Shown here: piece after piece, positions 13,177-56,075 of the stretch
Numbering within the stretch: position 1 is the first letter of the stretch
Layout of the letters: each line of letters opens with the position of its first letter
Virus record (IMG/VR): IMGVR_UViG_3300026484_000007
Span: 208,603 to 272,602 of that record
Length of the DNA: 64,000 bases
Direction: 5' to 3' (one strand)
Position numbers and translations under genes: made by a program
The notes under the pieces: generated by a model
The model's input: the letters and a program-made list of their open reading frames with translations, nothing else
Database searches by the model: none
Told to the model about the DNA's origin: nothing

Positions 13177-13317
13177 GAAAACTCGTGATCTTAAAACGTT
13201 GAGCTTCATTAGATATCTAAAGATATATACGAGTTCTAAAATTTATAAAACCGTTTTAGAACTCGTATATATCCTTAGCATCGAAAAAAGATGCTACTTG
13301 AAAAATCAAAGTTTTTC
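13177..13317. repeat. ~140-bp dispersed palindromic element, copy A
   Basis: GAAAACTCGTGATC..AAAACGTTG..GATATATACGAGTTCTAAAA..TTTTAGAACTCGTATATATC..GATGCTAC..AGTTTTTC. Confidence 0.85.
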
Positions 13318-13372
13318 TTTTTCATTTTTTAAAAAATTGAATTTTTTAAACGAAGCCAAAAAAGGATTTTTT

Positions 13373-14464
13373 ATGAGCGCGGCAAGCACAACGAGAGTGA
13401 TAAATTTAAACAGATCAATCTTTTATCTTAATCAATCTTGTGTAAAAGAAATTCATGAATCTTCAATGTTAATTGAAGAAATTTCAAGTAAAGAAATAAT
13501 TTCAAAAATAAGATCATTTATGCCTAATTTAGATAATAAAATTGCTAAGCAATTTAATAATATATATAGAATTTTATCTAATGCGTTAGCATCTAAAAAA
13601 GATCTTGAAAGAATAAAAAAGATCAATGATGAGCAAATGAAAGCCATCGAAAAATATTTAAAAAAGAATGGTATAAATACTAAAAAATTAAAAGATAGAC
13701 TTAAAGAGAAAAAACAATTAACTCCAACCGATTTAGATTTAATCATCGAGATGGGATTAATTGAATTAAAACACACAACTGCGAAAGATTTTATTGAAGT
13801 CGTAGCTTTCGTTTTAGTAGCTTTTATTTTAAATACTTTTATTATTTATTCTATACTTGATCTTATATTTTTCATCAATCCATTGGCTAATTATAGTCAA
13901 GCTATGATGGTAGCTGTTTCAATTGGAGCAGTACTTTCAGCACCATTCGTTGAAGAAGCTGGTAAACGAGTAAGTATTGAAAGAAAAAAAGGTTTACTGT
14001 ATATTATAGGTTTTAATATTGCTGAATATACTTCTTATGTTTCTGCAGCTGCAGGAGCAGGTCTTGGATACATGATAATTATGATGATTGTTCGATTGTT
14101 ACCGGTTGCAATGCATTTCTCAAATTATAGTATTCATCAAAAAGGTGATATTGATCAAAAAATAGCAGATAAGTATAAAATTTCTACTGAAAGAGATTTC
14201 AGACAAGACGCTCAACGAATAGCAATGACAATACATAGATTTTGGAATATTGGATTAATATTTTTAGCTCCACTTGCAGGTTGGGCAAATTCTTATTTTA
14301 GCAATAAATTTCCTGTGAAAAAAATTGAAGAAAAAATTGAACCAAGATCATATTTAAACGAAATTCAAAAATTCTTTAAAGAAAAATCTAAAACTTTAAA
14401 ATACATTAATGCTAAAAAAGTAATCGAAAAAAATATCAAAAAAAATATCAAAAAGGATAAATAA
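13373..14464 (+). CDS. PrsW/M82-like intramembrane glutamic protease with soluble N-terminal extension
   Basis: APFVEEAGK, GFNIAE, AMHF and IHRFWN motifs in TM segments. AAGGA RBS before ATG 13373; the track's start at 13199 lies inside the repeat. Confidence 0.65.
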   Translation: MSAASTTRVINLNRSIFYLNQSCVKEIHESSMLIEEISSKEIISKIRSFMPNLDNKIAKQFNNIYRILSNALASKKDLERIKKINDEQMKAIEKYLKKNGINTKKLKDRLKEKKQLTPTDLDLIIEMGLIELKHTTAKDFIEVVAFVLVAFILNTFIIYSILDLIFFINPLANYSQAMMVAVSIGAVLSAPFVEEAGKRVSIERKKGLLYIIGFNIAEYTSYVSAAAGAGLGYMIIMMIVRLLPVAMHFSNYSIHQKGDIDQKIADKYKISTERDFRQDAQRIAMTIHRFWNIGLIFLAPLAGWANSYFSNKFPVKKIEEKIEPRSYLNEIQKFFKEKSKTLKYINAKKVIEKNIKKNIKKDK

Positions 14465-14736
14465 TGGCTTTAAAAACTTCATATATTGAATTAAATAAAG
14501 ATTATCAAATAATTTTAGATAACTCTGGGCAAAATTCCTCAGCAGATAATTTTATTCAAGTTAATCATGGAACAGCAGAATTGTTCTTTGATACCGATAC
14601 TCCAAGTTCATCTTCGATTGGATTAAGATGGTCCGCTGGAGCTCGAATTTTATTCGTGCCTCAAGGATCAAAATTATATGGAAGACTTTGGAAAAATTCC
14701 GATAGCTGTAGCGTAATCGTGAACAAAGACTCTTAA
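14464..14736 (+). CDS. small beta-rich hypothetical protein
   Basis: 90 aa, AAGGA RBS, translationally coupled. Confidence 0.7.
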   Translation: MALKTSYIELNKDYQIILDNSGQNSSADNFIQVNHGTAELFFDTDTPSSSSIGLRWSAGARILFVPQGSKLYGRLWKNSDSCSVIVNKDS

Positions 14737-14746
14737 AGGATAAAAT

Positions 14747-15154
14747 ATGGCTAATAAAAATTATACAGTTGGCCTTGATAAAAAATATTTAGATCTAGTT
14801 GACGCAGATCTAACTCCAGAAAATCAAAGATTTTTAAATGATTACGTTGCTAAAAAATTAAGAATGATAGATAACACTATCATCGCAAATCATCTTAAAA
14901 AAATGGATCAAGAAGCTTCTCATTATAAAAATCTTGATAACTTTGAAAAACAAGAGATAATTAATTCCGAAAGATGGAAAAATCCATTGATCGGTGCAAC
15001 TATTGGAGGAGCTCTTGGTTTTGGACTTACTGATGTAATCAGTGGAAATCCTACGACCGATGGAATATTTGGCGCTCTTGGGTTAGGAGTTGGAGCTTAT
15101 CAAGGTAAGAAATATACTGATTTTAAATTAAAAAGGCAAGGATTGATAAAATGA
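14747..15154 (+). CDS. glycine-zipper membrane-type protein
   Basis: GATIGGALGFG and GALGLGVGAY. Confidence 0.65.
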   Translation: MANKNYTVGLDKKYLDLVDADLTPENQRFLNDYVAKKLRMIDNTIIANHLKKMDQEASHYKNLDNFEKQEIINSERWKNPLIGATIGGALGFGLTDVISGNPTTDGIFGALGLGVGAYQGKKYTDFKLKRQGLIK

Positions 15155-15894
15155 AACGAAGAAATTATTTTAATTATTTAAAAGGATCTGCAAAAGATCT
15201 TTTAGAAGAAAATGATCGTTATCGAGCGTTCTATCCCACTTCCACTGCCGCTGCCGCTCCACAAAGATCAATTTGGTCGGATATGAAAAACGGCGCAAAA
15301 AATCTTGGGAATAGCATAGTAAATTCTGCTAGTAAATTTGGATCTAAAATAACTAATGACCCAAAAATTGCTGCAGCTACAGGAGCAGCGATAGGTGGAG
15401 CTCTTCATCTTTACGATGTTCATGATGCAAAATCTGATTTATCTGATCTTATGGGCAAAAATTTTGATGCAGAAAAAATTAATAAAGATACATTCAATAG
15501 CAATTATGAGCAATACAAAGATCTTTATAATAAAGAAGGTATTAATAAATTTGATGCGAATAACGATGGATACTTAGATAAAAACGAACTTCATAAACTT
15601 TATAATACATATAAAAATGATACAAGTTGGTTCCCGTGGTGGAATGATGCAGATGATAAAATCAGTGCGGCTAAAGAATATTATGATTATATTCAAAAAA
15701 CTCCAGCAATGGATTTTAATAAAGATGGAATTGTAGATTCTAATGACACTAAAGCAATGAAAGATGTTGATCGTGTCGTTAATAGTAGTTTACCTGCGAA
15801 CTTAATGGGTGGTGCTGCAATTGGAGGAGCTCTTGGATATGGAACTAATAAACTTAATTCAAAACTTAATTCAAAATTTGGAGGACATTCATGA
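15151..15894 (+). CDS. glycine-zipper protein with two EF-hand-like loops
   Basis: GAAIGG at both ends; DANNDGYLDKNE and DFNKDGIVDSND. Confidence 0.65.
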   Translation: MKRRNYFNYLKGSAKDLLEENDRYRAFYPTSTAAAAPQRSIWSDMKNGAKNLGNSIVNSASKFGSKITNDPKIAAATGAAIGGALHLYDVHDAKSDLSDLMGKNFDAEKINKDTFNSNYEQYKDLYNKEGINKFDANNDGYLDKNELHKLYNTYKNDTSWFPWWNDADDKISAAKEYYDYIQKTPAMDFNKDGIVDSNDTKAMKDVDRVVNSSLPANLMGGAAIGGALGYGTNKLNSKLNSKFGGHS

Positions 15895-16658
15895 AAAATA
15901 TAAAAAAGACAAGAACGCTTAATTATTTAAATGAGGCATCTAATAGAGATCTTTCAATTGCTTTAACTGGATTAGGTTTTGGAATTGGTGGAGCCGCTCT
16001 TGGCGACTCAATATATGATGCTCACTTAGATCATTATAATTCCGAATTCCAAAAACAATTTTCCGATATTAATGCCACCAAAGATCAATTATTGAATGAA
16101 AAATTTGGTGATCCTGAAAATAATAAAGAAGCTCTTCAATCATATCAAGATCAATACAATAAAATAAAATTTGCTGATTTTAATAAAGATGGTTTCGTTG
16201 ATGAACGAGAATACAACAAAGCACTTGAAAATTATAAAAATTATATTAACAGCGGAGGTAATAATCCATTCTCTGATAATTATAAAAATTTAGATTATAA
16301 ACCAGATACAGTAAAACAATTAAATACTTATAAAAATTTATTACATGATAAAGATTTTGTATCTAAATTCGATGTAAATCAAGATGGAACATTTAACGCA
16401 AGAGAATTACAGTTATTGAAAAAACTTCCAGAGTATCAAGACAGAATGAATTCTTTTGAATATCAACCATATTTATATGGAACTGCTGGAGCAATAGCGG
16501 GAATGAAATTAATGGATGCTGCGACTAGAGGCGAAAGTTCTGATAAAGATCGAATAAATTTTCCAAGTAATAGATTTGCTCCGTTTGGTGCTCCAAAAAG
16601 ACCAAACGAATCTCAAGAAATCGTAGATAAAGTTCCACTACCACCGATAGTAAAATAA
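15891..16658 (+). CDS. glycine-zipper protein with two EF-hand-like loops
   Basis: GLGFGIGGAALG; DFNKDGFVDERE and DVNQDGTFNARE; C-terminal GTAGAIAG. Confidence 0.65.
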   Translation: MKNIKKTRTLNYLNEASNRDLSIALTGLGFGIGGAALGDSIYDAHLDHYNSEFQKQFSDINATKDQLLNEKFGDPENNKEALQSYQDQYNKIKFADFNKDGFVDEREYNKALENYKNYINSGGNNPFSDNYKNLDYKPDTVKQLNTYKNLLHDKDFVSKFDVNQDGTFNARELQLLKKLPEYQDRMNSFEYQPYLYGTAGAIAGMKLMDAATRGESSDKDRINFPSNRFAPFGAPKRPNESQEIVDKVPLPPIVK

Positions 16659-16692
16659 AAAATTATATAAAATTTAAATCAAAGGAAAATCG

Positions 16693-17458: not shown

Positions 17459-17505
17459 TTAAAAGTGATCTAAAAAAGATCACTTTTAATTTTTTTTGTC
17501 TTTAG
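17459..17505 (+). terminator. terminator on a GATC palindrome, with GTCTTTAG tail
   Basis: TTAAAAGTGATCTAAAAAAGATCACTTTTAA then T9. Confidence 0.65.
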
Positions 17506-17549: not shown

Positions 17550-17680
17550 GAAAACTTGAGTTTCCAGAACGTTGAGCTTCTATAGATATCTAAAGATATA
17601 TAGCAGTTCTAAAAATTTTAGAACTGCTTTTATATCGCTTGTATCTAAAAAAGATGCTACGTGGAAAATCAAAGTTTTTC
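17550..17680. repeat. ~140-bp dispersed palindromic element, copy B
   Basis: Same core, GCAGTTCTAAAA/TTTTAGAACTGC. Confidence 0.85.
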
Positions 17681-19418: not shown

Positions 19419-22400
19419 ATGATCAAAAAAGATACGTCTGATGCTACATTAAAATTAAAATCTGCAAAATTTTATATAGATTTTCATAATGAAAAAAATA
19501 ATAAATTATTTTTTTATGAAGTTTATTCTAAGAAAAAAGGAACTGCTGGAGCAGAGCGTCTCGAATACGCTTATATGACTCCAGACGACGAAGTGATCTT
19601 TTACAAACCCATCGATGATATCGAAGAGCATGAAATACCAAAGAAAGATCTTCGAGAGTTTCTTCTTGGTAGAATTAATAGCATAGCGATGTTAAAATTA
19701 GGAGCTAGAGTTGATATTAAATCAAAATCTTCTAAACCTACTTTTAAAATTAAAGCGTTGAGCAATGAACCCGAAGTAATTCTTTTTGCTAGTATTATTT
19801 TAGGATTAAGACCTGCGCTAGATTTCATGGGAATAAAGTATAGTTTTAATAAGACTAAAGAAGGTTATAAATCTATAAAACTATCCACTCAAGATGGTAA
19901 AACTAAATATTTTAATATTTATGCTAACTCTTTATACGATGAATACGTTTTAAATGGAATGTCTTCTTTTATTAAGAAAATTGAATTCACTGAAGAAAAT
20001 TTATCTTCTAAAGATGTATTCATAACTTATTTCGATAATCGTTTTGGTAAAGGTTTATTTAATTCTTATAATCAAAAGTTAGTATCTTTTATAGATACAA
20101 CGACTGAGCAAATTTTAAGATCGTATGGTTATAGTACGGATCCATTAAAATTATTATGTATAACTATGCCTAAGAAAATACTAAACGAAGCAGTCGATGA
20201 TATCGATAATCTTGAAAATAAAAGAATTAGAATGGCTGAAAGTATTGCTCACTCAGCTTATAATGCAGTTTCGCAAGCTCTTGTAAAATTCAAGAAAGAA
20301 TCTAAATTAGATAACGTTAAATTACATATTCAAAAAGATTATATTATTAATAATCTTATTAACACTGGTATGGTTCAATGGAGTAATCCAGTTAACCCAT
20401 TAGAAGAATTAACTACTTCTGCAAAAATTACTAAAACTGGGGTTGGGAATCCATTAAAAGAACAGATCACTATAGACAAAAGGGATCTTAATGAAAGTTA
20501 TTTTGGAGTTGTATCTGCGACACATACTAATGAGTACGGTGGAATAGGTTTAAACCAAACTCTCGTAAATAAAATGATGATCAAAGATAGATTCGGAAGT
20601 ATTTTAATTAAAAAATTCCAAGATACTAATCCTTTTGAAATACTAAGTCCAATTGAAAGTATTGCTCCATTTATGGATACAGATGATACTACTAGAAAAG
20701 TTATGGGGAATCAGCAAACCTCACAATTCATTCAAGTTAAAAATCCAGATGTTCCTCTTGTTCAAACTGGTTTTGAAGCTTATATACCTTATATAGTATC
20801 TGATAGATTTGCAATGAAAGCTAAAAAACCTGGAACTGTTAAATTAGAAAAAGACTATATTATAATGAAATACAATGATGGTTCTGAAGAAATCTTTAGT
20901 ACTAAACCCACTAAAGCGAGAACTAAAAGAGGTCTTTATATTCCAATTGAATATAACGTTCTTGTAAAAGATGGTCAAAAAGTAAAAGAAGGAGAAATCC
21001 TTGCAGCAACTAATTCTTTAAAACACGGAAAATTAGGTATAGGAAAAAATTTAGTAGTCGCAGAAATGTCTTATCGAGGTATGAATTACGAAGATGGTTG
21101 GGTAATATGCGAAGACCTTAAAGAAAAATATCAAAGTTCTTTATATGAAAAAATTACTATAATTATTCCAGAAGGTGCTAAGATTCAAGATTTTAATATT
21201 GAATTAAATAAAAACACTAAACCTGGAGAAAAATTAATTTCGTATGTTACAAACGCAACTGAGTCTTTAGAATTCGATGAAGAAAATAGTATTACTGATG
21301 AAAATACTGATGATTTAAGTACAGGTAAAGAGATTAGAGGTAATACAGTAACTTACTATAGTATCGGTGGACAAATTGCAGATTTTGTAATAAAATTAAA
21401 TTCTACTAAAATTGATAAAAAAATTATAGAAAAATTTAAATTTCAAAATTCAGAAATTGAAAAAAAATTAAAGATTTGCGAAAAACTCAAAAATGAAATT
21501 AATAAATTAGATTGTAGAGATAACATTGAACATCTTGAAGCTCTTGAAGTTGGTGGACATAAAGCAAATAAAATGGAGCCAGAAGGAGCGATTATTGAAG
21601 TCTATATCGAAACAGAAAATCCAATCAGAAACGGATCAAAATTTACTTTAGCGAGTACTGGTGGTAAAGGTACTGTACAATACATTATTGATAAAGATAA
21701 AAAACCTTATACAAAAGAAACTGGATTAGAAATTGATTTTATTGCGACTCCGTTGTCAATCATTTCAAGAAAAAACCCAAGTATTATTTTACAATTGTAT
21801 CTTGGAAAAGTAATTTATTTTCTAAATAAAAAAGTTGAAGAATTAGCTAAAGAAAATAAAATTTCTTCGGTTAGAACTTTAATTACTAAAGTATTTGAAA
21901 GAATTGATAAATCAGATGATAAAGTTTATCTAAATCAATTAAAAGGATTCTTAAAAAATAAAGATGATTTTCTTAAAAAATATATTTTAAAACATGATCC
22001 TTTAAATAACCCAGCTTTCCCAGCAATTATGCCTCCATTCGGAAGTAAATTAAGTACGAAAGATATCGAAGATGCTGCAGATATTCTTGGAATTCCTTTA
22101 CAAGAACATGTAATAATTCCAGAAGAAGATAATAAAGAGACTAAATATAAAGTTACTGTTGGAATTATGCCAGTATTTTATTTAGAACATTTTCCAAAAG
22201 CTATGTCAGGGGTAAGAGGAAGTATTAATGTTAAAAATCAATTAACGACTGGACAAGGTCGTGCCGGAACTAAAGAAGGAAACGGAGCAATTAAACTTGG
22301 TTTATATGATATGTTTTCCGTTACATCAAGACGAGCAAATAAGTTCATTAAAGAAATGTGGGCAGTAAAATCAGATGATTACGAAGCGAAAAAAGAACTT

Positions 22401-22538
22401 CGAAAGAAAATCATTAAATCAGCCGAAACTGGCGAAGAAATAAATGTTTCTGATATTGAAGTAAAACCAGAAGATATTACTACCAAAAAATTGATTGAAG
22501 CATATTTTTATGGAGCATGTTTGCAGCCACGTTTCTAA
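19419..22538 (+). CDS. DNA-directed RNA polymerase beta subunit, main fragment
   Basis: NKRIR, NPLEEL, RDLNESYFGVV..THTNEYGGIGL, DDTTRKVMGNQQTSQ, GKNLVVA..GMNYEDG, GSKF..GGKGTV, PLSIISRKN, GAIKLG. Confidence 0.93.
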   Translation: MIKKDTSDATLKLKSAKFYIDFHNEKNNKLFFYEVYSKKKGTAGAERLEYAYMTPDDEVIFYKPIDDIEEHEIPKKDLREFLLGRINSIAMLKLGARVDIKSKSSKPTFKIKALSNEPEVILFASIILGLRPALDFMGIKYSFNKTKEGYKSIKLSTQDGKTKYFNIYANSLYDEYVLNGMSSFIKKIEFTEENLSSKDVFITYFDNRFGKGLFNSYNQKLVSFIDTTTEQILRSYGYSTDPLKLLCITMPKKILNEAVDDIDNLENKRIRMAESIAHSAYNAVSQALVKFKKESKLDNVKLHIQKDYIINNLINTGMVQWSNPVNPLEELTTSAKITKTGVGNPLKEQITIDKRDLNESYFGVVSATHTNEYGGIGLNQTLVNKMMIKDRFGSILIKKFQDTNPFEILSPIESIAPFMDTDDTTRKVMGNQQTSQFIQVKNPDVPLVQTGFEAYIPYIVSDRFAMKAKKPGTVKLEKDYIIMKYNDGSEEIFSTKPTKARTKRGLYIPIEYNVLVKDGQKVKEGEILAATNSLKHGKLGIGKNLVVAEMSYRGMNYEDGWVICEDLKEKYQSSLYEKITIIIPEGAKIQDFNIELNKNTKPGEKLISYVTNATESLEFDEENSITDENTDDLSTGKEIRGNTVTYYSIGGQIADFVIKLNSTKIDKKIIEKFKFQNSEIEKKLKICEKLKNEINKLDCRDNIEHLEALEVGGHKANKMEPEGAIIEVYIETENPIRNGSKFTLASTGGKGTVQYIIDKDKKPYTKETGLEIDFIATPLSIISRKNPSIILQLYLGKVIYFLNKKVEELAKENKISSVRTLITKVFERIDKSDDKVYLNQLKGFLKNKDDFLKKYILKHDPLNNPAFPAIMPPFGSKLSTKDIEDAADILGIPLQEHVIIPEEDNKETKYKVTVGIMPVFYLEHFPKAMSGVRGSINVKNQLTTGQGRAGTKEGNGAIKLGLYDMFSVTSRRANKFIKEMWAVKSDDYEAKKELRKKIIKSAETGEEINVSDIEVKPEDITTKKLIEAYFYGACLQPRF

Positions 22539-26667: not shown

Positions 26668-26715
26668 TGGAGTTGTGATCTTTTTTAGATCGCTCTCCAG
26701 TTTTTTTGTCGTTAG
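26668..26715 (+). terminator. terminator on a GATC palindrome, with GTCGTTAG tail
   Basis: TGGAG..GATCTTTTTTAGATC..CTCCA then T7. Confidence 0.65.
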
Positions 26716-26750
26716 AAAAAATTCTGAAAAAATTCTGAAAAAAATTATAA

Positions 26751-26890
26751 AAAACTTGAGATTCGCGGACGTTGCGCTTCTGTAGATATCTAAAGATATA
26801 TAGCAGTTCTAAAATTATCAGAGTGGTTTTAGAACTCGTATATATCTTTGTGTATCCAAAATAGATGCTACATAGAAAATCAAGTTTTTC
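26751..26890. repeat. ~140-bp dispersed palindromic element, copy C
   Basis: Same core. Confidence 0.85.
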
Positions 26891-30571: not shown

Positions 30572-30660
30572 TATAATAAATAATATAATAAATAATATAA
30601 TAAATAATATAATAAATAATATAATAAATAATATAATAAATAATATAATAAATAATATAA
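30565..30660. repeat. tandem repeat (TAAATAATATAA)x8
   Basis: Direct reading. Confidence 0.95.
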
Positions 30661-39094: not shown

Positions 39095-41458
39095 ATGCCT
39101 ACAAACACAAACAATATAAATCATAAAAATTATAAATTAAAAATTCTTCAAGAGGCATCTTGGGAAGATGCTTTTGAAGATGAAGATCCAGTTGATGATG
39201 TTGTGGATAGTGCGTCAGCGCTAAACTCTCACGAACAGTCGCTTAAAGCAATATCATCTTTAGAAGATCTCGAAAAGATCGATAAACAGTTTGATTCATT
39301 ATATAAAAATTTTCTTGATAAAAATGATGATATTAATCTTTTTTCAGCGAAAGTTCAACGAATTGAATTGAGTAAAACATCTCAATTATATAAAAGAGAA
39401 AAAGAAAAAGAAGAGCCTGATGATCCTTTCGATGATCATAAACAAGCTCAGGAAGAATTAAATAAACTTTTCAATAATGAATCTAATGATATTCTTAAGA
39501 TTTTCCAATCTCAAACTATTCATAATAATAGAAAAGATCTTTATGAGATGTACGATGAAATCGCTGATATAAATTATATTGCGTATAAAATGCTAAGAGT
39601 GTATCTTGATAATATTTTAATTAAGAATGCTCAAACTAAAACATTCATTAATATCAAAGAAAATGAAGATAATAAAAATTTAGCTAAAATCGATGATACT
39701 AAATTAGATTTTATTAAAAAGATGCTTGATATGTTTTTAGTATTTTTTGATATTCAAAATAAGTTAAAAAACCAAATTGTTCCAAAGACTTTAAAGTACG
39801 GAGATTTTTATATTGAAGTTGTTGATCTTTCAAAGATCGATAATATTCTTTATAGACAACCTCAATTATTAACTGAAAATTTCGTAATTGAAAATAATGG
39901 AAGGAAAAAAACTTATAAAAATGTTTCTTACGCTTATCTTGAATTACCGTATAAAGAAAATTTTATGGAGTCTATGGATGCTGAAAACATTAATGAATCT
40001 AAATTCGGATCTAAAAAAGATTCGATTCATGATTTAAATAATTTAGCTCCAGCAGGCAATAATTTTGAAAATTTGGAAGAATCCTTTCAATACAAACTTG
40101 AAAAATTACGAGATAAATTATCGGCGAGAGTTCTTGAAGAAAGCGATATTCCTTTTTTAAAAAGAAATGATAATGAAGAATTTGATATTGAAAATTTATT
40201 TAAAATGGATCTTGATAAGATCGAAAATATTTATTTAAGATTACAAGACCCAAGTAAAGTTCTTAAAGTAGAGCAAGATGGAGTACTTTATGGGTATTTA
40301 GTAATCGAAGATGTCGATAGAGAAAAAAATGGGGATGAAGAAGAGATAAACATATACAAACGATTTTTATCGGATAATGAAAGTGGATCAAATGATGATG
40401 TAAATAAAAATGTTACAAAAAATATTGCTGGAGAAATTTCAGAGAAAATCTCAGAAAGACTTGCGGAATTTATTAATCAGAAAGGTGATTTTGAAGCTAT
40501 TCCAGATGAACTTAAAGCATCATTAAGAGTAATTATTTATCAAAAATTACTTAAGAAATCTAAGATAAAATTTAGATTTTTAGAAACTTCTGATATGGTA
40601 AATTTTCATACAGTGATTGATAAATTTGCTCCATATGGAACGTCAATTTTCGATCCAATTATTCAACCAGTAAAAATGTATACTATTGGATTAATGACTT
40701 CGATAGTATCAAGACTTAGTAGAGCTGCAGTGATTCGAAAATGGAATATTGAAGTAGGTAATAAAAGAAACTATCAAGCTGTAATCGAGCAAGTTAAAAA
40801 AGATCTTCGTAATAAATCAGTAACATACGATAGTCTTACTAGTATTAAAAATATATCAAAAATGATTACCGATTTTAAAGATATTGCGACAGTTACTAGA
40901 GATGGTCAAAGATTTATCGATCTTGAAGTGATGCCAATGCATGATCGATCTTTACCTATTCAAGAATTACAAGATCTAAAAACAGAATTAATTGCTGCGA
41001 CTGGAATTCCTGCGACTTATTTAAATATGCCAGATGCAGTTGATCTTAGAGAGACTCTTGTAAATATTAATATCAATTTTGCAAATACTATTATTAGTCA
41101 GCAAAGTTATATCGAAGATGGTCTGAATATTTTATTTAATATTATTATTAAAAAATTATTAAATTTAAATGGAATACCAGATAAAGGTTTCAATATATCT
41201 AGTATTTTTAAATTAACTTTAAACACTCCATTAGTACTTCAATTACAACAGAGTGAAGCTCTTGTTGGAAGTATAATTAATATTATTGGAGCATTGAATC
41301 AAGCTCAGCTTCAGATAGATCCATTAAAATTATTAGAAATGTATATACCTCAAATGAATTGGGAAGCATTGAAAAAATCTGGAGAAGAATTAACTCGAGA
41401 CGAAATCAAAAAGCAAATTATGATGCAACAAGACGGTCAGCAAGCTGGAGGATTTTAA
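39095..41458 (+). CDS. portal protein, T4 gp20-like
   Basis: LYEMYDEI, LKYGDFYIE, PYGTSIFDP, SRLSRAAVIRKWNIEVGN, LIAATGIPATYL. Confidence 0.8.
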   Translation: MPTNTNNINHKNYKLKILQEASWEDAFEDEDPVDDVVDSASALNSHEQSLKAISSLEDLEKIDKQFDSLYKNFLDKNDDINLFSAKVQRIELSKTSQLYKREKEKEEPDDPFDDHKQAQEELNKLFNNESNDILKIFQSQTIHNNRKDLYEMYDEIADINYIAYKMLRVYLDNILIKNAQTKTFINIKENEDNKNLAKIDDTKLDFIKKMLDMFLVFFDIQNKLKNQIVPKTLKYGDFYIEVVDLSKIDNILYRQPQLLTENFVIENNGRKKTYKNVSYAYLELPYKENFMESMDAENINESKFGSKKDSIHDLNNLAPAGNNFENLEESFQYKLEKLRDKLSARVLEESDIPFLKRNDNEEFDIENLFKMDLDKIENIYLRLQDPSKVLKVEQDGVLYGYLVIEDVDREKNGDEEEINIYKRFLSDNESGSNDDVNKNVTKNIAGEISEKISERLAEFINQKGDFEAIPDELKASLRVIIYQKLLKKSKIKFRFLETSDMVNFHTVIDKFAPYGTSIFDPIIQPVKMYTIGLMTSIVSRLSRAAVIRKWNIEVGNKRNYQAVIEQVKKDLRNKSVTYDSLTSIKNISKMITDFKDIATVTRDGQRFIDLEVMPMHDRSLPIQELQDLKTELIAATGIPATYLNMPDAVDLRETLVNININFANTIISQQSYIEDGLNILFNIIIKKLLNLNGIPDKGFNISSIFKLTLNTPLVLQLQQSEALVGSIINIIGALNQAQLQIDPLKLLEMYIPQMNWEALKKSGEELTRDEIKKQIMMQQDGQQAGGF

Positions 41459-41484
41459 AATCCTCCAGCTTTTTTTGTCGTTAG
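41442..41484 (+). terminator. intrinsic terminator with GTCGTTAG tail
   Basis: AGCTGGAGGATT-TTAA-AATCCTCCAGCT-TTTTTT. Confidence 0.85.
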
Positions 41485-41494
41485 AAAAAACTTT

Positions 41495-41625
41495 GAAAAC
41501 TCGTGATCCTAAAACGTTAAGCAACGATAGATATCTAAAGATATATAGCAGTTCTAAAATTTTTAGAACTGCTTTTATATCGCTTGTATCTAAAAAAGAT
41601 GCTACGTGGAAAATCAAAGTTTTTC
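41495..41625. repeat. ~140-bp dispersed palindromic element, copy D
   Basis: Same core. Confidence 0.85.
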
Positions 41626-41650: not shown

Positions 41651-41791
41651 GAAAACTCGTGATCTTAAAACGTTGAGCAACGATAGATATCTAAAGATAT
41701 ATACGAGTTCTAAAACCACTTTAGAAATTTTAGAACTGCTTTTATATCGCTTGTATCTAAAATAGATGCTACTTTAAAAAACAAGTTTTTC
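41651..41791. repeat. ~140-bp dispersed palindromic element, copy E (tandem with D)
   Basis: Same core. Confidence 0.85.
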
Positions 41792-43599: not shown

Positions 43600-43600
43600 G

Positions 43601-43670
43601 AATTATTAAAAATCATTAAGAATTATTAAGAATTATTAAGAATTATTAAAAATTATTAAGAATTATTAAA
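43601..43670. repeat. tandem repeat (AATTATTAAR)x7
   Basis: Direct reading. Confidence 0.9.
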
Positions 43671-43708
43671 AATATATAGAATTATAAAAAATTATAAAAA
43701 GGATTACG

Positions 43709-46621: not shown

Positions 46622-46737
46622 TCTTTTTTAGATCACTTCTACGGGAGTGATCTTTTTTAGATCACTTTCAAAATTGAATTAAAAATAATTAAAAATAATT
46701 AAAAATAATTAAAAATAAAAAACTTAAAGGATTCAAA

Positions 46738-49277: not shown

Positions 49278-49307
49278 ATTTATTTAAACGTAGATCAAAC
49301 GTCATTT

Positions 49308-49345
49308 AAAAGTGATCTTTTTAAGATCACTTTTTTTGTCGTTAG
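49308..49345 (+). terminator. terminator on a GATC palindrome, with GTCGTTAG tail
   Basis: AAAAGTGATCTTTTTAAGATCACTTTTTTT. Confidence 0.7.
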
Positions 49346-49377
49346 AAAAAATCCATAGAAAAGATTATAAAAATTAA

Positions 49378-49515
49378 GAAAAAACAGCGATCCTAAAACG
49401 TTGCGCTTCTATGGATACACAAAGATATATACGAGTTCTAAAGTTTTATAGTTTTAGAACTCGTATATATCCTTAGTATCGAAAAAAGATGCTACTTAGA
49501 AAATCAAAATTTTTC
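49378..49515. repeat. ~140-bp dispersed palindromic element, copy F
   Basis: Same core. Confidence 0.85.
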
Positions 49516-49546: not shown

Positions 49547-50509
49547 ATGCTAAATGAAATTACTTTATTTATCACAAAAGAATGCAATATGAACTGCGAT
49601 TATTGTACTCAAGAAAATAATAAAGATTCGATAGATGATAATGAATCGCTAGAGTTAACAATCAAAACAATTGAAAGTTTAATCAAAGATAAAAAATTAA
49701 GTTCAAAAACTTCGTGGCATTTTTTTGGAGGAGAACCTACTTTAAAATTCGATAAAATGTTAAAATTATATAAGTATTTAAAAACTCAAGGCTTTAAAAA
49801 TTTTAAATTATTTACTAATGGATTAATAAAAGAATCTTTTTTAGATCACATTCCAAATGATATAATGATTTCGATATCCTACGATGGATTGTCTCAGAAA
49901 AATCGATCTTCAAAAGATCGTGATAAAATTATTAATAATATTAAATATTTAATTACTAAAAATAATTTTGAAAAAATAAATTTCATTTATGATGAATTTT
50001 TATTAAAAAATTATTTTTTTATTAGTGATCTTTTAAAGATCCCTGAGTGGAAAATTACACATAGTTTAAATAGAAATTTTTATTGGTGGACTCCAGAAAG
50101 AATTGAAAAATATTTAACCGAATTTAATGCTTTAGCAGAATATAATTTTTTTGCAAATATATATAGAAAAAATAAAGATATCGAAGATATATATTTTATG
50201 TATTTTCAAAATATATTTAATCAATCAAAAAGATCGATTTTAGGATGTGGGCTTAAAGATTCTCGAATAAGTATATATCCAGATGGATCTATCAAAAATT
50301 GCGGAATTAGATCATTTAATGAAGATGATTATGTTTCTCAAAAAGAGATTGAATCTTTTTGTAAAAATTGTGAAGCTTATAAATTCTGCGATAAAAAATG
50401 CCCTATCGAAATGAAAAAATTTCCAGAGCTTTTTCAATATTCTTTTTGTGAAATAAAAATAAATGAAATTAAAACGCTTGAAAAATATTTTAAAAAGGAA
50501 CTTAAATGA
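49547..50509 (+). CDS. radical SAM protein with SPASM-type C-terminus
   Basis: CNMNCDYC, FFGGEP, TNG, SYDG; CG...C...CKNC..FCDKKCP. Confidence 0.9.
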   Translation: MLNEITLFITKECNMNCDYCTQENNKDSIDDNESLELTIKTIESLIKDKKLSSKTSWHFFGGEPTLKFDKMLKLYKYLKTQGFKNFKLFTNGLIKESFLDHIPNDIMISISYDGLSQKNRSSKDRDKIINNIKYLITKNNFEKINFIYDEFLLKNYFFISDLLKIPEWKITHSLNRNFYWWTPERIEKYLTEFNALAEYNFFANIYRKNKDIEDIYFMYFQNIFNQSKRSILGCGLKDSRISIYPDGSIKNCGIRSFNEDDYVSQKEIESFCKNCEAYKFCDKKCPIEMKKFPELFQYSFCEIKINEIKTLEKYFKKELK

Positions 50510-50916
50510 ATTCAGAACTTATCTTATACAAGTATCTTATTACAGATAAAATACGATCTTTAAAAGATCTTTTTAATCTTAATCCAGATGAAAAATTAAT
50601 TTATGCAATAGATAATTTATTAGAGAGCGCTATTCTTTTTGAATCTTTAAATGATTCAAAACTAGAAAAAATTTCAGAAGAATTATTTAATCTTCATGAA
50701 AGATTATATTCGGAAATAGAAAATATAGTTCATAAAAAATTCCAAAATGAATTATTAAATGAAAAAATTATTAAAGAAAAGCAAGAGTACTACGAAGAGA
50801 TCTTAAAAAGATCACAAACTGATTTAGACAAAAAAGAATATGAAGATATCGAATCTCTCGAATTTCAATTGAAAAAGGATATAAGAAAGGATACAAGAAA
50901 GGATACTAAAAAATGA
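50506..50916 (+). CDS. hypothetical helical protein
   Basis: Translationally coupled to both neighbours. Confidence 0.7.
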   Translation: MNSELILYKYLITDKIRSLKDLFNLNPDEKLIYAIDNLLESAILFESLNDSKLEKISEELFNLHERLYSEIENIVHKKFQNELLNEKIIKEKQEYYEEILKRSQTDLDKKEYEDIESLEFQLKKDIRKDTRKDTKK

Positions 50917-52100
50917 AAGAAGCATCAAAAAATACAATAGAAAACACGGTAGTGATCGATTTAATTACTAATAAAGATTGCAATATGAATTGCAAGTATT
51001 GCTTTGAGCAAGGACATTTTAAGAATACTCAGCTAACCGAAGAAACAATAAATAATATTTTTAATTATATTAAATTATTAAAAGAAAAAGATCCTTCGGT
51101 AAATTTTGAATTTATTTTAATTGGTGGAGAACCGAGCATCGCAAAAAATTTAAATTTATTTTTAGAAAAATTGAAAACCTTAGACGAAAAGGATCTAAAA
51201 AAGATCACTTATATGACAAATGGATTATCAAAAGAAAAAATTGAAAATCATTTAAATCAAATAAATAATCTAATTGATCCTAAAAAGATCGAACTTCAAA
51301 TTTCTTATGATGGAAAAGGTTTTCATGATAAAAATAGATTATTTAAACAACAAGGGAATTTAATTCCTACAAGTGCTATTATAAAAGAGAATATCGATTA
51401 TTTTTATAATTCTGGTAAATGTTATGTTACTATAAAAAGTACAATAACTTATCAAGATTTATTAGATAAAGGATCTTTATTAGATACATTAAACGATTTT
51501 GAAGAATTAAATGAAAAATACCATATATTATATTCCGTTTCAGAAGACAAAACATCGTTCGAAATTCCTGAGAATTTATTTAAAAATAATTTAAATAAAT
51601 TATTAGAATCGTTATTGATCTTAGAAAGATTCGAAAAAGATTTCTTTAAAAAGAAAGGATATTTTTTGACTAAATGGTTTAATGGTGCTAGTTATAGAGC
51701 AGATAATAAAACTTGTGGTATGGGAAATAAAATTATTAGTTTTTCTCCAACGGGAGATGCAATGGCTTGCCATGCAATTGAATACTACGACACTAATGAA
51801 TCTAAAAAAGATCTTTTATACGGAAATATCAATCAAGACTCTTTAGATAGCATTTATGAAAATTTTGAAAGAATTAAAAAAGAAATCAATAATAATAAAT
51901 ACAACCAATGCATAGATTGCAAAACTTTATATTGTAGCAAATGTCCAGCATACACTTTCGAATCTTTAAAAGATCTAAAAAAGATCTATACTGGATCTAA
52001 ATTAAATAATCAAAATTTATGCAACTTTTTTAATTTATTAAGCATAAATATTTATAGAGTTTATAAAGAATTAAATATTCTTGATAAGCTGAAAAAATAA
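50913..52100 (+). CDS. radical SAM/SPASM protein
   Basis: CNMNCKYC, IGGEP, TNG, ISYDG; CGMG...ACH...CIDC...CSKCP...C. Confidence 0.92.
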   Translation: MKEASKNTIENTVVIDLITNKDCNMNCKYCFEQGHFKNTQLTEETINNIFNYIKLLKEKDPSVNFEFILIGGEPSIAKNLNLFLEKLKTLDEKDLKKITYMTNGLSKEKIENHLNQINNLIDPKKIELQISYDGKGFHDKNRLFKQQGNLIPTSAIIKENIDYFYNSGKCYVTIKSTITYQDLLDKGSLLDTLNDFEELNEKYHILYSVSEDKTSFEIPENLFKNNLNKLLESLLILERFEKDFFKKKGYFLTKWFNGASYRADNKTCGMGNKIISFSPTGDAMACHAIEYYDTNESKKDLLYGNINQDSLDSIYENFERIKKEINNNKYNQCIDCKTLYCSKCPAYTFESLKDLKKIYTGSKLNNQNLCNFFNLLSINIYRVYKELNILDKLKK

Positions 52101-53521: not shown

Positions 53522-54377
53522 AAAGGATCGTAAGACTCATTATCATATAATCCTTTCGGATTATTGTGATCGAAGCTGTCCTTATTGTATAAATTCTTCG
53601 GATCAAAATGAGATCATATCAAAAGACGATTACGATTTAATTTTAAAAGAATTAAAAAAAGTTATTACAACAGATGATCTGCAAAAGATCGTTATCGAAT
53701 TTAATGGAGGGGAATTTACTTTAATAAAAAATATTGAATGGTATTTTGAAAGATTATCTTTTATTTTTCAAGATCTATCTAAAAGTGATCTAAAAAAGAT
53801 ACAAATAATACTTACTACGAATTTCATAGCAGAAAATATTATTTATAATAATATTTATGATCACTTGAGATCTTTTTTAGATCATGATCAAATATGGTTT
53901 TGGGTAAGCACGCACTATGATTATACTGAAGAAAATTATATTCAAAAATTAAAAGATTTTTTAAGTTATCATAAAATTAAAAATAATAAAATAAATTACT
54001 GGTTTAACACATTAACCGTTTCGAAAAAACATAATAAATACATTAATGATCTTAGAAAGATCGCAAAAGAAAAATTAAAAGAATTATTTGATTTTCATAA
54101 CATTATTTTTAGTACTTCCAATTTAATTCCAGTTTCTTCGCTGAAAAAGAATATATATTGGTATGACACCAAACCTAAATTATGCTCGGGAAATATTTAT
54201 TTAATTATGTATAAAGGAGTGAGCAATTATTGTAAAGAAGAATTTTTTTCTTTCAATGAGATCTTTAAAAGATACGAACAGGATAATCAAGGTAATCGAA
54301 GTATACTTTGTAAGAAATCCTGCACCGATCAAAAATTTGATGAAGAATTATTTAAGCCTAAATATTTAAAAAAATAA
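53508..54377 (+). CDS. radical SAM protein
   Basis: CDRSCPYC, NGGEF, TTN. Confidence 0.85.
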   Translation: MIKNKKDRKTHYHIILSDYCDRSCPYCINSSDQNEIISKDDYDLILKELKKVITTDDLQKIVIEFNGGEFTLIKNIEWYFERLSFIFQDLSKSDLKKIQIILTTNFIAENIIYNNIYDHLRSFLDHDQIWFWVSTHYDYTEENYIQKLKDFLSYHKIKNNKINYWFNTLTVSKKHNKYINDLRKIAKEKLKELFDFHNIIFSTSNLIPVSSLKKNIYWYDTKPKLCSGNIYLIMYKGVSNYCKEEFFSFNEIFKRYEQDNQGNRSILCKKSCTDQKFDEELFKPKYLKK

Positions 54378-54423
54378 TTAAAATAATTAAAATAATAAAA
54401 ATAATAAAAAGCAAGGGAAATTA

Positions 54424-55191
54424 ATGCAATATGTATATTATAGACTCGACCCTAAATATTTACAAGAAAAATATAAATTAGAAAGTACTCTTCAAGATTT
54501 TTTTTATGGATATCAAACGTTTATAAATCCAGAAAAGAAATACATAATTAAAAACATTCCTCCATTAATCAATCAAGATAAAGACGGCTATTTTTATTTT
54601 TGGAATAAATTTTTATCGTTATTTTCATATGCTAGCGATCATCATCGATTTACTTCGCAAGATATATATATTGATCACGATGTTTTTTTATTTAATTTGC
54701 CTTCCAAAGATACCGAGAATTCCAATAATTTTTATTATACTTATGGGATTTATAATAGCACTAATAAAGTTAGTGCAGCTTGTTTTTCTTTAAAAAAATT
54801 TGAAGATTTTAAATATTATTTTAAAGTTTTTTTTAGTTGTAATGATTATATTAGAAAGAAGCCAGAAAAATTCGAAGAATTTTTATTAACAGAGTGGATA
54901 AAATCATTCATGTCCGACAAAAATTCTGAAAAATTAAAGAAAAAAATCATAAAGTTTTCAGAAAATAAGATAACGTTAGAAAAGCAAAAAACCTTTAAAA
55001 ATTTTATACTACATTATCAGACAAATTTTTTATATCAATTTATTATAAAAAATAAAGATAGTATTAAAATATTTTTAAAAGAAAAATTTTATATTAAAAC
55101 ATTACATGATCTTTTAAAGATCCTTAAAGATCTTGAAAAGATTTATAAGGATTTAAAAAATGAAAAAATATCAAAAAGTTATTTTTTATAA
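54424..55191 (+). CDS. DxD-motif (GT-A-like) protein, paralog of 56135-56761
   Basis: RLDPKY..KY and YIDHD shared with the paralog. Confidence 0.45.
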   Translation: MQYVYYRLDPKYLQEKYKLESTLQDFFYGYQTFINPEKKYIIKNIPPLINQDKDGYFYFWNKFLSLFSYASDHHRFTSQDIYIDHDVFLFNLPSKDTENSNNFYYTYGIYNSTNKVSAACFSLKKFEDFKYYFKVFFSCNDYIRKKPEKFEEFLLTEWIKSFMSDKNSEKLKKKIIKFSENKITLEKQKTFKNFILHYQTNFLYQFIIKNKDSIKIFLKEKFYIKTLHDLLKILKDLEKIYKDLKNEKISKSYFL

Positions 55192-55945
55192 ATTAAATTT
55201 TTTCAATGGTAATCTTTTTTACGCATTTGAATATTTTGAATATCTACGAAAAAATAATTGGAAATTAATAATAGATTTAAATGGATCTTTAAAAGATCCA
55301 TTTAAACTTCCAATAAATAAAAAAATTTTATTTGAAGCGTTTCGAGAAAAATACAGTAAAAAATATCATAATTTATTTACTGAAATTATTTTCTTGAAAC
55401 CTTCAACTTTTTTTGTCGCCGATAAAATCCTTGTATTAGATCAAACCAGCATAAAATATTTAAATAAAACATTCGTGTCTAAAAAGATTATTTATAATTA
55501 TGGAGACGATGAGCGATCTTTAAAAGATCCTTTGAATAATAAAAATAATAAAAATAATAAAAATATTATTACGATAGGAGATAAAGATATCGGTTGTAAA
55601 ATTCAATATCATTATCCATTAAAATTAAATTTTAAAATCTTAAAACGTTTAAATTATAAAAGGATCCAAAAAAGATCCTTTTTGGAAAATAAAACAAAAA
55701 ACATCTATGAAAGAAAAAGAAATGTTAAAGATTTTCATTATACTTTCGATACTTTAATTTATAAAAAAGAAAATTTCTGGGAAAGAGCAAATCGATTAAT
55801 TCCAGAATGTAAATTTTATAATAAAGAAATAATATTTGAAAATAAAGATAAAAGAATTGATAGCGCAAATCTTCGCTATCAATCGTCGTGGAAAGATTAT
55901 AGTTTATATCATAGTGATTTTAAAGATTTCGTGGAAAATCTTTGA
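55160..55945 (+). CDS. glycosyltransferase-like (GT-B?) protein, paralog of 59644-60579
   Basis: GNLFYAFEY, AFREKY and RLIPECKFYNKEI shared with the paralog. Confidence 0.4.
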   Translation: MKKYQKVIFYKLNFFNGNLFYAFEYFEYLRKNNWKLIIDLNGSLKDPFKLPINKKILFEAFREKYSKKYHNLFTEIIFLKPSTFFVADKILVLDQTSIKYLNKTFVSKKIIYNYGDDERSLKDPLNNKNNKNNKNIITIGDKDIGCKIQYHYPLKLNFKILKRLNYKRIQKRSFLENKTKNIYERKRNVKDFHYTFDTLIYKKENFWERANRLIPECKFYNKEIIFENKDKRIDSANLRYQSSWKDYSLYHSDFKDFVENL

Positions 55946-56075
55946 TTTTTAAAGTAGCATCTATTTTCGATACAAGCGATATAAAAGCAGTTCTAAAAAA
56001 TTTAGAACTGCTTTAGAACTCGTATATATCTTTGGGTATCTAATGAAGCGCAACGTTTTAGGATCACGAGTTTTC
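55934..56075. repeat. ~140-bp dispersed palindromic element, copy G (inverted)
   Basis: Reverse complement reads GAAAACTCGTGATCCTAAAACGTTGCGCTTC...GATGCTAC. Confidence 0.85.

What the first reader, a model, noticed from the sequence alone, without database searches (positions are those of the whole stretch)
13177..56075. Seven copies of a ~140-bp palindromic intergenic element
Seen: copies at 13177, 17550, 26751, 41495, 41651, 49378 and, inverted, 55934. Ends are imperfect inverted repeats (GAAAACT...AGTTTTTC). The centre is an inverted pair of AGTTCTAAAA/TTTTAGAACT arms with a variable spacer, and two arm types (GATATATACGAG and GATATAWAGCAG) are shuffled between copies. Five copies sit just after a GTCRTTAG terminator at operon boundaries. 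The arms contain the same bipartite motif seen at 7116-8724. Inference: divergent phage promoter pairs, multiple replication/recombination origins, or a MITE-like element. No transposase or target duplication is visible.
Basis: partly seen in the sequence, partly recalled or inferred. Interest (0 to 1): 0.65.

Follow-up and report, generated by a model that had tools for sequence, protein, structure and literature searches.

The report
Jumbo-phage back-to-back promoter cassettes
A 131-142-bp two-fold-symmetric sequence, repeated 24 times in a 273-kb jumbo phage genome from a hydrothermal vent, is most likely two copies of the phage's own conserved promoter set back to back at operon boundaries; this is an unusual variant of the repeated regulatory cassettes already known in large phages.

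Summary
There are seven copies in the window, at 13177, 17550, 26749, 41495, 41651, 49378 and, inverted, 55934. The whole 272.6-kb virus genome holds 24, all intergenic.

Each copy has two homologous but distinct about 65-nt arms (alpha and beta) that meet at AGTTCTAAAA / TTTTAGAACT. The same box also occurs singly ("gamma" sites) as TTTTAGAACT-N15-GATAT..TAGCA. In gamma sites it always points at a gene start 52-54 nt away or at the 5' end of a hairpin-rich small RNA. Related metagenomic phages (portal 57-58% identical) show the same geometry. The box is therefore the upstream end of a conserved promoter, and the element is two divergent promoter units.

Twenty of 24 copies follow an intrinsic terminator with a T7-GTCGTTAG-A6 tail, 18 directly and 2 as second tandem copies. 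Either arm can face the downstream gene (beta 11, alpha 10, both 1).

I found no target duplication, no base-pair covariation and no copy outside this phage lineage. No RNA data exist, so promoter activity is inferred and not shown.

Verdict: a new variant of a known kind (compare the T4-type PeSL cassettes). Interest is moderate. The role of the gene-less arm is open.

The parts
13177..13317 (.). Copy 1, 141 bp. The alpha arm (13177-13241) points left and the beta arm (13254-13317) points right towards the gene at 13373. Spacer 12 nt; CG/CG.
17550..17680 (.). Copy 2, 131 bp. Alpha arm 17550-17614; beta arm 17616-17680, facing the gene at 17742, which is followed by the RNAP beta-like gene at 19419. 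Spacer 1 nt; GC/GC.
   Evidence: folds
26749..26890 (.). Copy 3, 142 bp. Alpha arm 26749-26814; beta arm 26827-26890, facing the gene at 27034. Spacer 12 nt; GC/CG (mismatched arm types).
41495..41625 (.). Copy 4, 131 bp, the first of a tandem pair just after the portal gene. Alpha arm 41495-41559; beta arm 41561-41625.
41651..41791 (.). Copy 5, 141 bp, the second of the tandem pair. Alpha arm 41651-41715; beta arm 41728-41791, facing the gene at 41893. Spacer 12 nt; CG/GC.
49378..49515 (.). Copy 6, 138 bp. Alpha arm 49378-49443; beta arm 49452-49515, facing the radical-SAM gene at 49547. Spacer 8 nt; CG/CG.
55934..56075 (.). Copy 7, 142 bp, inverted. The beta arm (55934-55998) lies on the left and the alpha arm (56011-56075) faces the gene at 56135. 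The centre carries an 11-nt partial duplication of the box. The element overlaps the stop of ORF 55160-55945, and no GTCRTTAG terminator precedes it.
13120..13165 (+). Terminator before copy 1: a hairpin (13120-13144) followed by T7-GTCATTAG.
17459..17505 (+). Terminator before copy 2: a 13-bp hairpin followed by T8-GTCTTTAG.
26670..26721 (+). Terminator before copy 3: a hairpin followed by T7-GTCGTTAG-A6.
41444..41490 (+). Terminator of the portal gene, before copy 4: an 11-bp hairpin followed by T7-GTCGTTAG-A6.
49305..49351 (+). Terminator before copy 6: the GTGATC..GATCAC hairpin followed by T7-GTCGTTAG-A6.
8664..8724 (-). Single gamma promoter site (box at 8715-8724). It reads leftward into the 206-aa membrane-protein ORF 8663-8043, whose ATG lies 52 nt after the box.
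7100..7145 (-). Single gamma site (box 7136-7145). It reads leftward into a three-hairpin small-RNA candidate at 7107-7022.
7320..7363 (-). Single gamma site (box 7354-7363). It reads leftward into a longer GC-rich structured RNA candidate at about 7325-7165.
7950..7995 (-). Single gamma site (box 7986-7995). It reads leftward into a second copy of the three-hairpin RNA at about 7957-7872.
   Evidence: (D8, D14)

Best explanation
The element is a composite regulatory cassette at operon boundaries of a jumbo phage that encodes its own multisubunit RNA polymerase. It consists of two homologous promoter units, alpha and beta, set back to back. Their upstream boxes (TTTTAGAACT) abut at the centre, and transcription would leave the element in both directions.

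Each unit reads, on its transcribed strand, TTTTAGAACT, then 15-16 nt, then GTATC, then about 10 nt, then a start region (AGCG in alpha, GATGCTAC in beta), followed by a conserved about 25-nt leader ending in GTTTTC. The arm facing the next gene drives that operon. The other arm fires back towards the preceding terminator.

Because both arms are promoters, the cassette works in either orientation. This explains why alpha and beta face the gene equally often.

Shown: the anatomy, the genomic positions, the orientation rules and the conservation of the single-box promoter in relatives. Inferred: that the arms initiate transcription, where they start, which polymerase reads them, and what the gene-less arm is for.
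For: (1) Single gamma sites share the box, the N15 spacing and a GATAT..TAGCA block with the arms. All 14 point in one direction: either at an ATG 52-54 nt after the box, through an A-run and a Shine-Dalgarno sequence (6 sites), or at the first base of GC-rich hairpin RNAs.

(2) The same box, with the same N15-GATAT/GAAAT spacing and about 51-54 nt to the ATG, precedes minus-strand genes in relatives L001, L005 and L006, whose portal proteins are only 57-58% identical. The motif is therefore conserved as a promoter would be.

(3) A truncated single beta arm (genome position 4709) has its ATG 54 nt after the box, the same geometry as gamma sites. The single beta arms at 186309, 188432 and 42292 also point at genes.

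(4) All 24 paired elements are intergenic. Eighteen lie directly after a hairpin + T7-GTCGTTAG-A6 terminator and 2 are second tandem copies, each ahead of the first gene of the next operon. One (188287) lies between divergent genes, so both arms have a gene there.

(5) The gene-proximal arm is beta in 11 copies, alpha in 10 and both in 1. Gene-facing and gene-less arms are equally conserved.

(6) The CG/GC dinucleotide does not covary between arms: 15 matched against 13 expected. Where the arms differ, the pair is simply broken. The symmetry is therefore not maintained as a hairpin.

(7) The closest informative relative, L218 (portal 63% identical), has at the same portal|next-gene site a terminator tail, a leftward alpha-like block and a rightward TTTTAGAACT.
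Against: There is no transcript evidence of any kind; no RNA run holds this genome.

In 21 of 24 copies one arm has no gene to transcribe.

A conserved stretch of about 65 nt per arm is much longer than the promoters mapped in other RNAP-encoding jumbo phages, which have about 10-nt AT-rich early motifs and 4-12-nt late motifs (PMC7598289).

Every element pairs one alpha arm with one beta arm, never alpha/alpha or beta/beta. This hints at a function of the unit as a whole.

Two half elements at convergent gene junctions (genome positions 70985 and 77465) point at nothing.

Seventeen terminators are followed by a gene with no such promoter. Relative L219 has no element after its portal gene.

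The downstream genes mix DNA metabolism and virion functions and are mostly unknown, so no temporal class can be assigned.
Confidence: 0.55

Rival explanations
1. Only the gene-facing arm is a promoter. The dyad is the binding site of a dimeric or oligomeric phage regulator (activator, repressor or RNAP specificity factor), and the second arm is kept because the protein complex is symmetric.
For: The centre is a perfect 10+10 palindrome. The two TTAGAA cores lie 11 bp apart in 13 copies and 22 bp apart in 6, so they fall on the same face of the helix. Alpha is always paired with beta. Gene-less arms are as conserved as gene-facing ones.
Against: Gamma sites and single arms work, judged by position, with one box only. 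The other spacings (9, 13, 13, 18 and 30 bp) are tolerated. The 12-nt spacers look related by descent (the same word or its reverse complement in 21839, 250308 and 235407), so the +11 class need not reflect selection for helical phase. Either arm type can be the gene-facing one.
Confidence: 0.15
2. A non-autonomous mobile element (MITE-like, comparable to Neisseria Correia elements) that carries outward promoters and has spread through the genome.
For: It has terminal inverted repeats, a size of 131-142 bp, 24 copies in both orientations, tandem copies at three places, and mosaic copies in which all four combinations of two variable blocks occur. Relative L219 lacks an element at the portal site. 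Correia elements are reported to create promoters at either or both ends (PMC2649163).
Against: There is no target-site duplication and the edges are not sharp; conservation fades into context-specific flanks. No copy lies inside a gene or in an odd context. No transposase was seen near any copy in the ORF lists and family scans run, though this was not searched exhaustively. A diverged counterpart sits at the same site in L218. No copy turned up in 2.9 million viral contigs or the metagenome scan: 200 pattern hits, none matching the arm profile. The X2 strain, at about 1-2% divergence, keeps the right arm joined to the downstream gene at both sites tested.
Confidence: 0.1
3. The element acts as a nucleic-acid structure: a long RNA hairpin (bidirectional terminator, insulator or RNase III processing site) or a DNA cruciform.
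For: Single strands fold end to end, with z-scores of -2.9 to -9.2 as RNA in 24 copies and -6.8 as DNA. The central 12-bp hairpin with its T-rich tail scores as terminator-like on both strands. The element sits between operons.
Against: Any palindrome folds this way. There are no compensatory changes: CG/GC differences leave CC and GG mismatches, and the consensus fold keeps only the inner stem. In 6 copies a 12-nt spacer opens a large loop. A canonical terminator already precedes 18 copies directly. There is no Rfam match.
Confidence: 0.1
4. Multiple replication origins, or sites for a site-specific recombination or packaging enzyme.
For: The elements are repeated, symmetric, AT-flanked and spread over the genome. 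In T4, some origins are promoters plus an unwinding element (my own knowledge, not tested here).
Against: There are no iterons beyond the dyad and no initiator gene adjacent to the copies examined. Twenty-four origins in 273 kb would be without precedent. The strict link to terminators and gene starts is not expected for origins.
Confidence: 0.04

Closest known systems
PeSL (promoter-early stem-loop) cassettes of T4-type phages (Arbiol et al. 2010, PMC2839356; Comeau et al. 2014, PMC4122927)
   Same: Both are short composite terminator/promoter motifs, repeated tens of times in the intergenic regions of a large myovirus-like genome and similar enough to recombine. PeSLs number about 50 per genome and their promoter and terminator activities were demonstrated.
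   Different: A PeSL carries one sigma70-consensus early promoter with the stem-loop placed inside or next to it. PeSLs cluster in hyperplastic regions before ORFans. Here there are two divergent non-sigma70 units of about 65 nt each forming a 131-142-bp dyad, the terminator is a separate upstream module, and copies flank core genes (portal, RNAP, DNA polymerase). Recombination or mini-circles were not tested.
[quoted passage not shown]
   Same: This phage has split beta/beta'-like RNAP genes. A conserved motif can be found by sequence analysis upstream of operons, and the gamma sites have an AT-rich block (ATATATAAAT) about 10 nt before the inferred start.
   Different: The known motifs are single, about 10 nt long, centred at -10, and not arranged as dyads. 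Here there is an extra conserved box about 30-40 nt upstream, and the alpha and beta arms replace the AT-rich block with other sequence. The RNAP proteins are only about 22% identical to those phages.
Correia repeat enclosed elements (CREE) of Neisseria and other bacterial MITEs (PMC2649163)
   Same: They are 100-150-bp elements bounded by inverted repeats, found in either orientation in intergenic DNA, and reported to generate a promoter at either or both ends and to fold into RNase III substrates.
   Different: CREE have a TA target duplication, a non-palindromic core and insertion polymorphism between strains. None of these was found here, and the setting is a virus genome.
Bidirectional (pseudo-symmetric) bacterial promoters (PMC12825309, PMC10268837)
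   Same: Sequence symmetry lets transcription leave one short region in both directions.
   Different: In those promoters the symmetry lies in the -10 element, and the two polymerase orientations compete for one site. Here two complete units are placed back to back, with inferred starts about 80-100 bp apart.

Membership tests
PeSL-type terminator/promoter cassette | Repeated intergenic motif that combines a promoter with a stem-loop terminator | tested here: met
   20 of 24 copies follow a hairpin + T-run terminator (18 directly, 2 as second tandem copies) and precede the next operon. Promoter function is inferred from the gamma-site geometry.
PeSL-type terminator/promoter cassette | Promoter matches the host sigma70 consensus (-35/-10) | tested here: not met
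   The sigma70 scan gives no outward hit in the arms, and its total is no higher than in shuffles (25 against 29.9). The conserved boxes are TTTTAGAACT and GTATC/GATAT.
PeSL-type terminator/promoter cassette | Concentrated in hyperplastic regions upstream of ORFans | tested here: not met
   Copies are spread over the whole genome and flank the portal, RNAP beta-like, DNA polymerase, thymidylate kinase and radical-SAM genes.
PeSL-type terminator/promoter cassette | Mediates recombination between copies (indels, mini-circles) | tested here: inconclusive
   Mosaic copies with all four combinations of two variable blocks suggest exchange. No strain comparison was possible because contigs break inside the repeats.
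MITE / Correia-like element | Terminal inverted repeats | tested here: met
   The ends are GAAAAC.. / ..GTTTTC, and the whole element is an imperfect palindrome.
MITE / Correia-like element | Target-site duplication | tested here: not met
   No direct repeat flanks any of the 21 copies with definable ends. The flanks follow the context instead (terminator side or gene side).
MITE / Correia-like element | Filled and empty sites among close relatives | tested here: inconclusive
   The X2 strain keeps both tested sites, but contigs end inside the elements. L219 lacks an element after its portal gene, and L218 has a diverged one there. All of these relatives are distant.
Jumbo-phage virion-RNAP early promoter | Conserved AT-rich about 10-nt motif centred near -10 of mapped early transcription start sites | not testable with these tools
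   No RNA data exist. Gamma sites have such a block before the inferred start; the alpha and beta arms do not.
Intrinsic terminator / structured RNA element | Base pairing maintained by compensatory change | tested here: not met
   Across 13 equal-length copies only the invariant inner stem is supported, and CG/GC differences break pairs. There is no Rfam family match.
Replication origin | Iterons or initiator sites plus an unwinding element, with initiation mapped there | not tested
   No specific feature was seen, and no replication data are available.

The most novel reading that the evidence does not exclude
The cassette is an orientation-independent promoter module whose second, gene-less arm is used. 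At about 20 operon boundaries it would fire back into the preceding A-tract/hairpin/T-tract terminator. This would make a family of short conserved antisense RNAs that carry the complement of the T7-GTCGTTAG-A6 tail, acting as a genome-wide insulator or antisense layer of transcription control in a lineage of vent jumbo phages with its own bipartite promoter code.
Probability: 0.2. Interest if true: 0.7.

Novelty: new variant of a known kind. Interest (0 to 1): 0.5.

Why it matters

This uncultured vent phage offers a promoter candidate that is long, bipartite and easy to recognise, conserved across a clade, and in this one genome built into symmetric double cassettes. These cassettes, together with 42 conserved terminators, divide the genome into operons.

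If confirmed, this would provide:
- a transcription map of an uncultivated jumbo phage from sequence alone;
- a defined DNA target for its unusual polymerase or specificity factor;
- a natural example of a promoter module that works in either orientation.

If the gene-less arm is active, it would also be a systematic source of terminator-proximal antisense RNA.

Tried and rejected
1. Looking for the genome or close kin.
- Megablast against phage records found nothing.
- tblastn found only about 22%-identical RNAP subunits.
- The search for related loci with the portal protein in viral contigs found nothing.

2. Pattern scan for the central palindrome. It gave 79 viral and 120 metagenome loci, but an nhmmer profile of the arms matched none of them. 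The four contigs from the same vent project were inspected by eye and are chance palindromes.

3. Literature. Searches for the genome size and for the box sequence returned nothing relevant.

4. RNA evidence. No RNA run holds the stretch.

5. Read laying. Contigs of all four runs end inside the repeats, so presence/absence and within-element diversity could not be read. One X4 joint that skips 144 bases (13181 to 13326) has only 22 letters on its shorter side, and I did not rely on it.

6. A test of whether terminators followed by a back-pointing arm have more A-tract on their 5' side, as expected if antisense transcripts had to be stopped. There was no difference: 4.1 against 4.8 A in 8 nt, p = 0.38.

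7. Function of downstream genes as a clue to timing. PHROGs and Pfam gave almost nothing. PDB sequence searches and the Atlas did not identify the large proteins after the portal gene.

8. An inward sigma70-like match in beta arms (TTGAAA-17-TAGCAT). I rejected it as a signal because such 9/12 matches are no more frequent than in shuffles, and because the truncated arm at genome position 4709 lacks that part yet sits directly before a gene.

9. Helical phasing of the +11 spacer class. I treated this as ambiguous because the 12-nt spacers look related by descent.

No genetic code other than table 11 was used.

Full report
**What the window is.** The window is the last 64 kb of a single 272,602-bp contig, which the tools treat as a virus record. 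GC content is 19-34%, and almost all genes lie on the + strand. It encodes:
- a class I ribonucleotide reductase;
- a T4-type portal protein;
- several split beta/beta'-like RNA polymerase pieces (8825-10273, 11774-13126, 19419-22538), whose nearest phage relatives are only about 22% identical (Staphylococcus S6, Yersinia phiR1-37, Bacillus PBS1, Fusobacterium phages).

The DNA is held by runs labelled hydrothermal vent metagenome. No RNA run holds it. It is therefore an uncultured jumbo phage with its own multisubunit polymerase.

**Checking the observation.**
- Seven copies of 131-142 bp lie at 13177, 17550, 26749, 41495, 41651, 49378 and, inverted, 55934.
- The ends are imperfect inverted repeats.
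- The centre is AGTTCTAAAA / TTTTAGAACT with a spacer of 1, 8 or 12 nt.
- CG and GC variants next to the box are combined freely.
- Five copies follow a T-run + GTCRTTAG tail.
- TTTTAGAACT occurs 20 times in the window against 0.92 expected.

In the whole genome I count 24 paired elements, all intergenic, plus 7 single arms and about 14 single "gamma" sites.

**Anatomy.** Each element has two arms of about 65 nt that are homologous but consistently different.
- Alpha carries AACGTTGCGCTTC, GATAC/GATATC and GATATATA before the box.
- Beta carries ACGTAGCATC, T6, AGATAC and GATATAAAA before the box.
- Twenty-two elements are alpha + beta. Two have a gamma-like arm plus beta. None is alpha/alpha or beta/beta.
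- Conservation starts about 58 nt from the box and fades outward, without a sharp edge.
- The distance between the two boxes is 20 nt in 13 copies and 31 nt in 6. The rest are 18, 22, 22, 27 and 39.

**Which way the box points.** The single gamma sites settle this. On the transcribed strand they read TTTTAGAACT, N15, GATAT(A/T)TAA(A/T)TAGCA. What follows is one of two things:
- an A-run, a Shine-Dalgarno sequence and an ATG 52-54 nt after the box (six sites, including the 206-aa ORF at window 8663-8043);
- immediately, a GC-rich hairpin RNA.

One such RNA, window 7107-7022 on the minus strand, folds into three hairpins at -57.5 kcal/mol, z = -9.7.

Relatives from other metagenomes have portal proteins 57-58% identical and are syntenic. 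They carry the same box with the same spacing, about 51-54 nt before minus-strand genes (L001 12622, L005 630, L006 401). A motif with fixed orientation and distance to gene starts, kept across that much divergence, is a promoter in all but experimental proof. The box is its upstream end and TAGCA is near the start.

A truncated single beta arm (genome position 4709) has its ATG 54 nt after the box, the same geometry.

By homology each arm of the dyad is such a unit, and the two units diverge from the centre. A reading of the arms as face-to-face units is not.

**Context.**
- A genome map shows a regular grammar: operon, hairpin, T7-9, GTCGTTAG, A6, then the cassette, then the next operon.
- There are 42 such terminators, all in gene orientation.
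- Eighteen cassettes follow one directly and two are second tandem copies. One lies between divergent genes, so both of its arms have a gene.
- The arm that faces the gene is beta 11 times and alpha 10 times. The cassette is therefore used in either orientation, and gene-less arms are as well conserved as gene-facing ones.
- The genes served include a DNA polymerase fragment, thymidylate kinase, the operon with the large RNAP beta-like gene, the genes after the portal gene and a radical-SAM cluster. Most have no annotation, so no temporal class can be assigned.

**Tests of the rival explanations.**

*Structure.* All copies fold as long hairpins (z -2.9 to -9.2 as RNA, -6.8 as DNA), as any palindrome must. 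Several points argue against structure as the selected feature:
- Only the invariant inner stem survives in a consensus fold.
- CG/GC differences produce CC and GG mismatches rather than compensation.
- Matched arm types (15 of 24) are at the chance level of 13.
- There is no Rfam match.

*Mobility.* Several points argue against a MITE:
- There are no target duplications.
- The flanks follow the context: the terminator side always reads AAAAAACTTTT before the end, whichever arm is there.
- No copy lies in a gene.
- There is no match to the arm profile among 200 palindrome hits from viral and metagenome collections.

*Positional conservation.* Relatives have repeated palindromes of their own at the same two boundaries (after the portal gene and before the radical-SAM gene). 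The closest informative one, L218 (portal 63% identical), shows after its portal gene a T8-GTCTTTAG-A6 tail, a block shared with our alpha arm (TATCTAAAGATATAT), a leftward box variant and a rightward TTTTAGAACT. L219 has only a 97-nt spacer there.

The picture is a regulatory site that is old, evolves quickly together with its reader, and is homogenised within each genome. All four combinations of two variable alpha blocks occur, which points to exchange between copies.

*Origins.* Nothing specific supports this reading.

**What remains unexplained.**
- Why a second promoter faces the preceding terminator in 21 of 24 copies.
- Why alpha always pairs with beta.
- Why the first about 25 transcribed nucleotides are conserved.
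- Why two half elements sit at convergent junctions (genome positions 70985, 77465).

The 11- or 22-bp spacing of the two box cores in 19 copies would fit a symmetric protein complex. However, the 12-nt spacers look related by descent, so this is weak. Terminators next to a back-pointing arm are not more bidirectional than the others.

**Comparison with known systems.**
- The nearest described thing is the PeSL of T4-type phages. These are composite sigma70 promoter plus stem-loop cassettes, about 50 per genome, shown to promote, terminate and recombine (PMC2839356, PMC4122927). Our element shares the logic but not the promoter type, the single-promoter layout or the hyperplastic-region bias.
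- Promoters mapped in phiKZ and AR9 are short single motifs (PMC7598289).
- Correia elements share size, inverted ends and outward promoters, but they are true MITEs (PMC2649163).
- Bacterial bidirectional promoters are symmetric at the -10 element, not built of two full units (PMC12825309).

I therefore file the element as a new variant of a known kind.

**Limits.** All function is inferred from position and conservation. No code other than table 11 was used, and no contig was taken for human.

Noticed in passing
whole genome; window examples 13123, 15180, 24815, 32044, 51187, 55658: The 15-bp motif GATC-W7-GATC (mostly GATCT-W5-AGATC) occurs 116 times in 272.6 kb, against 0-1 in Markov-1 simulations. 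It almost never occurs at other spacings (W6: 2; W8-W10: 0). 77 copies lie inside ORFs in frames 0 and 1, so the motif does not encode one peptide. The looser form ATCT-W5-AGAT occurs 231 times, and GATC itself is 2.4 times over-represented. The beta arm contains a degenerate copy, and relatives have similar ATC-W7-GAT boxes in their own intergenic elements. Function unknown; it could be a protein site or a small hairpin.
   Followed up: partly
window 2585, 6962, 7812, 13150, 17490, 26701, 41470, 49331; 42 in the genome: The terminators have variable hairpins but an invariant tail, T7-9-GTCGTTAG-A6, always in gene orientation. Related tails occur in relatives (GTCTTTAG, GTCATTAG). At 17 sites the next gene's ribosome-binding site follows within about 20-40 nt with no other promoter candidate. 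The tail may therefore be more than a terminator, for example a restart or processing signal.
   Followed up: partly
window 7022-7107, about 7165-7325 and about 7872-7957, minus strand: Three GC-rich, strongly folded small-RNA candidates lie here. Two are near-identical three-hairpin RNAs (z = -9.7) and one is longer. Each starts right after a gamma promoter and ends in a U-run. None matches an Rfam family. Similar hairpin starts follow gamma sites at genome positions 53572, 94763, 128713, 161069 and 174935.
   Followed up: partly
window 6680-6749, + strand: A tRNA/tmRNA-like T-arm fragment gives a weak Rfam hit to tmRNA models (22.5 bits, below threshold). ARAGORN finds no tRNA in the window.
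   Followed up: no
window 30564-30666, 43597-43695, 46677-46718, 61591-61692: Intergenic AT-rich tandem arrays with periods of 10 or 12 bp (up to 10 copies) sit ahead of genes that lack the 140-bp element. A period close to the helical repeat suggests curved DNA, perhaps another kind of upstream element.
   Followed up: no
window 49547-52100 and relatives L001, L003, L005: A cluster of radical-SAM genes (PHROG hits include QueE-like) follows the head-gene block and is syntenic in relatives. It is possibly a nucleotide- or DNA-modification pathway.
   Followed up: no
window 15151-16658: Two adjacent ORFs have EF-hand / dockerin-type calcium-binding motifs (Pfam E-values 1e-6 to 1e-7), which is unusual in a phage.
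   Followed up: no
genome 53281-53737 (outside the window): At a convergent gene junction, a rightward single beta arm and a leftward gamma-like arm face each other across about 190 bp that contain a hairpin RNA start. This is a possible sense/antisense RNA pair.
   Followed up: no
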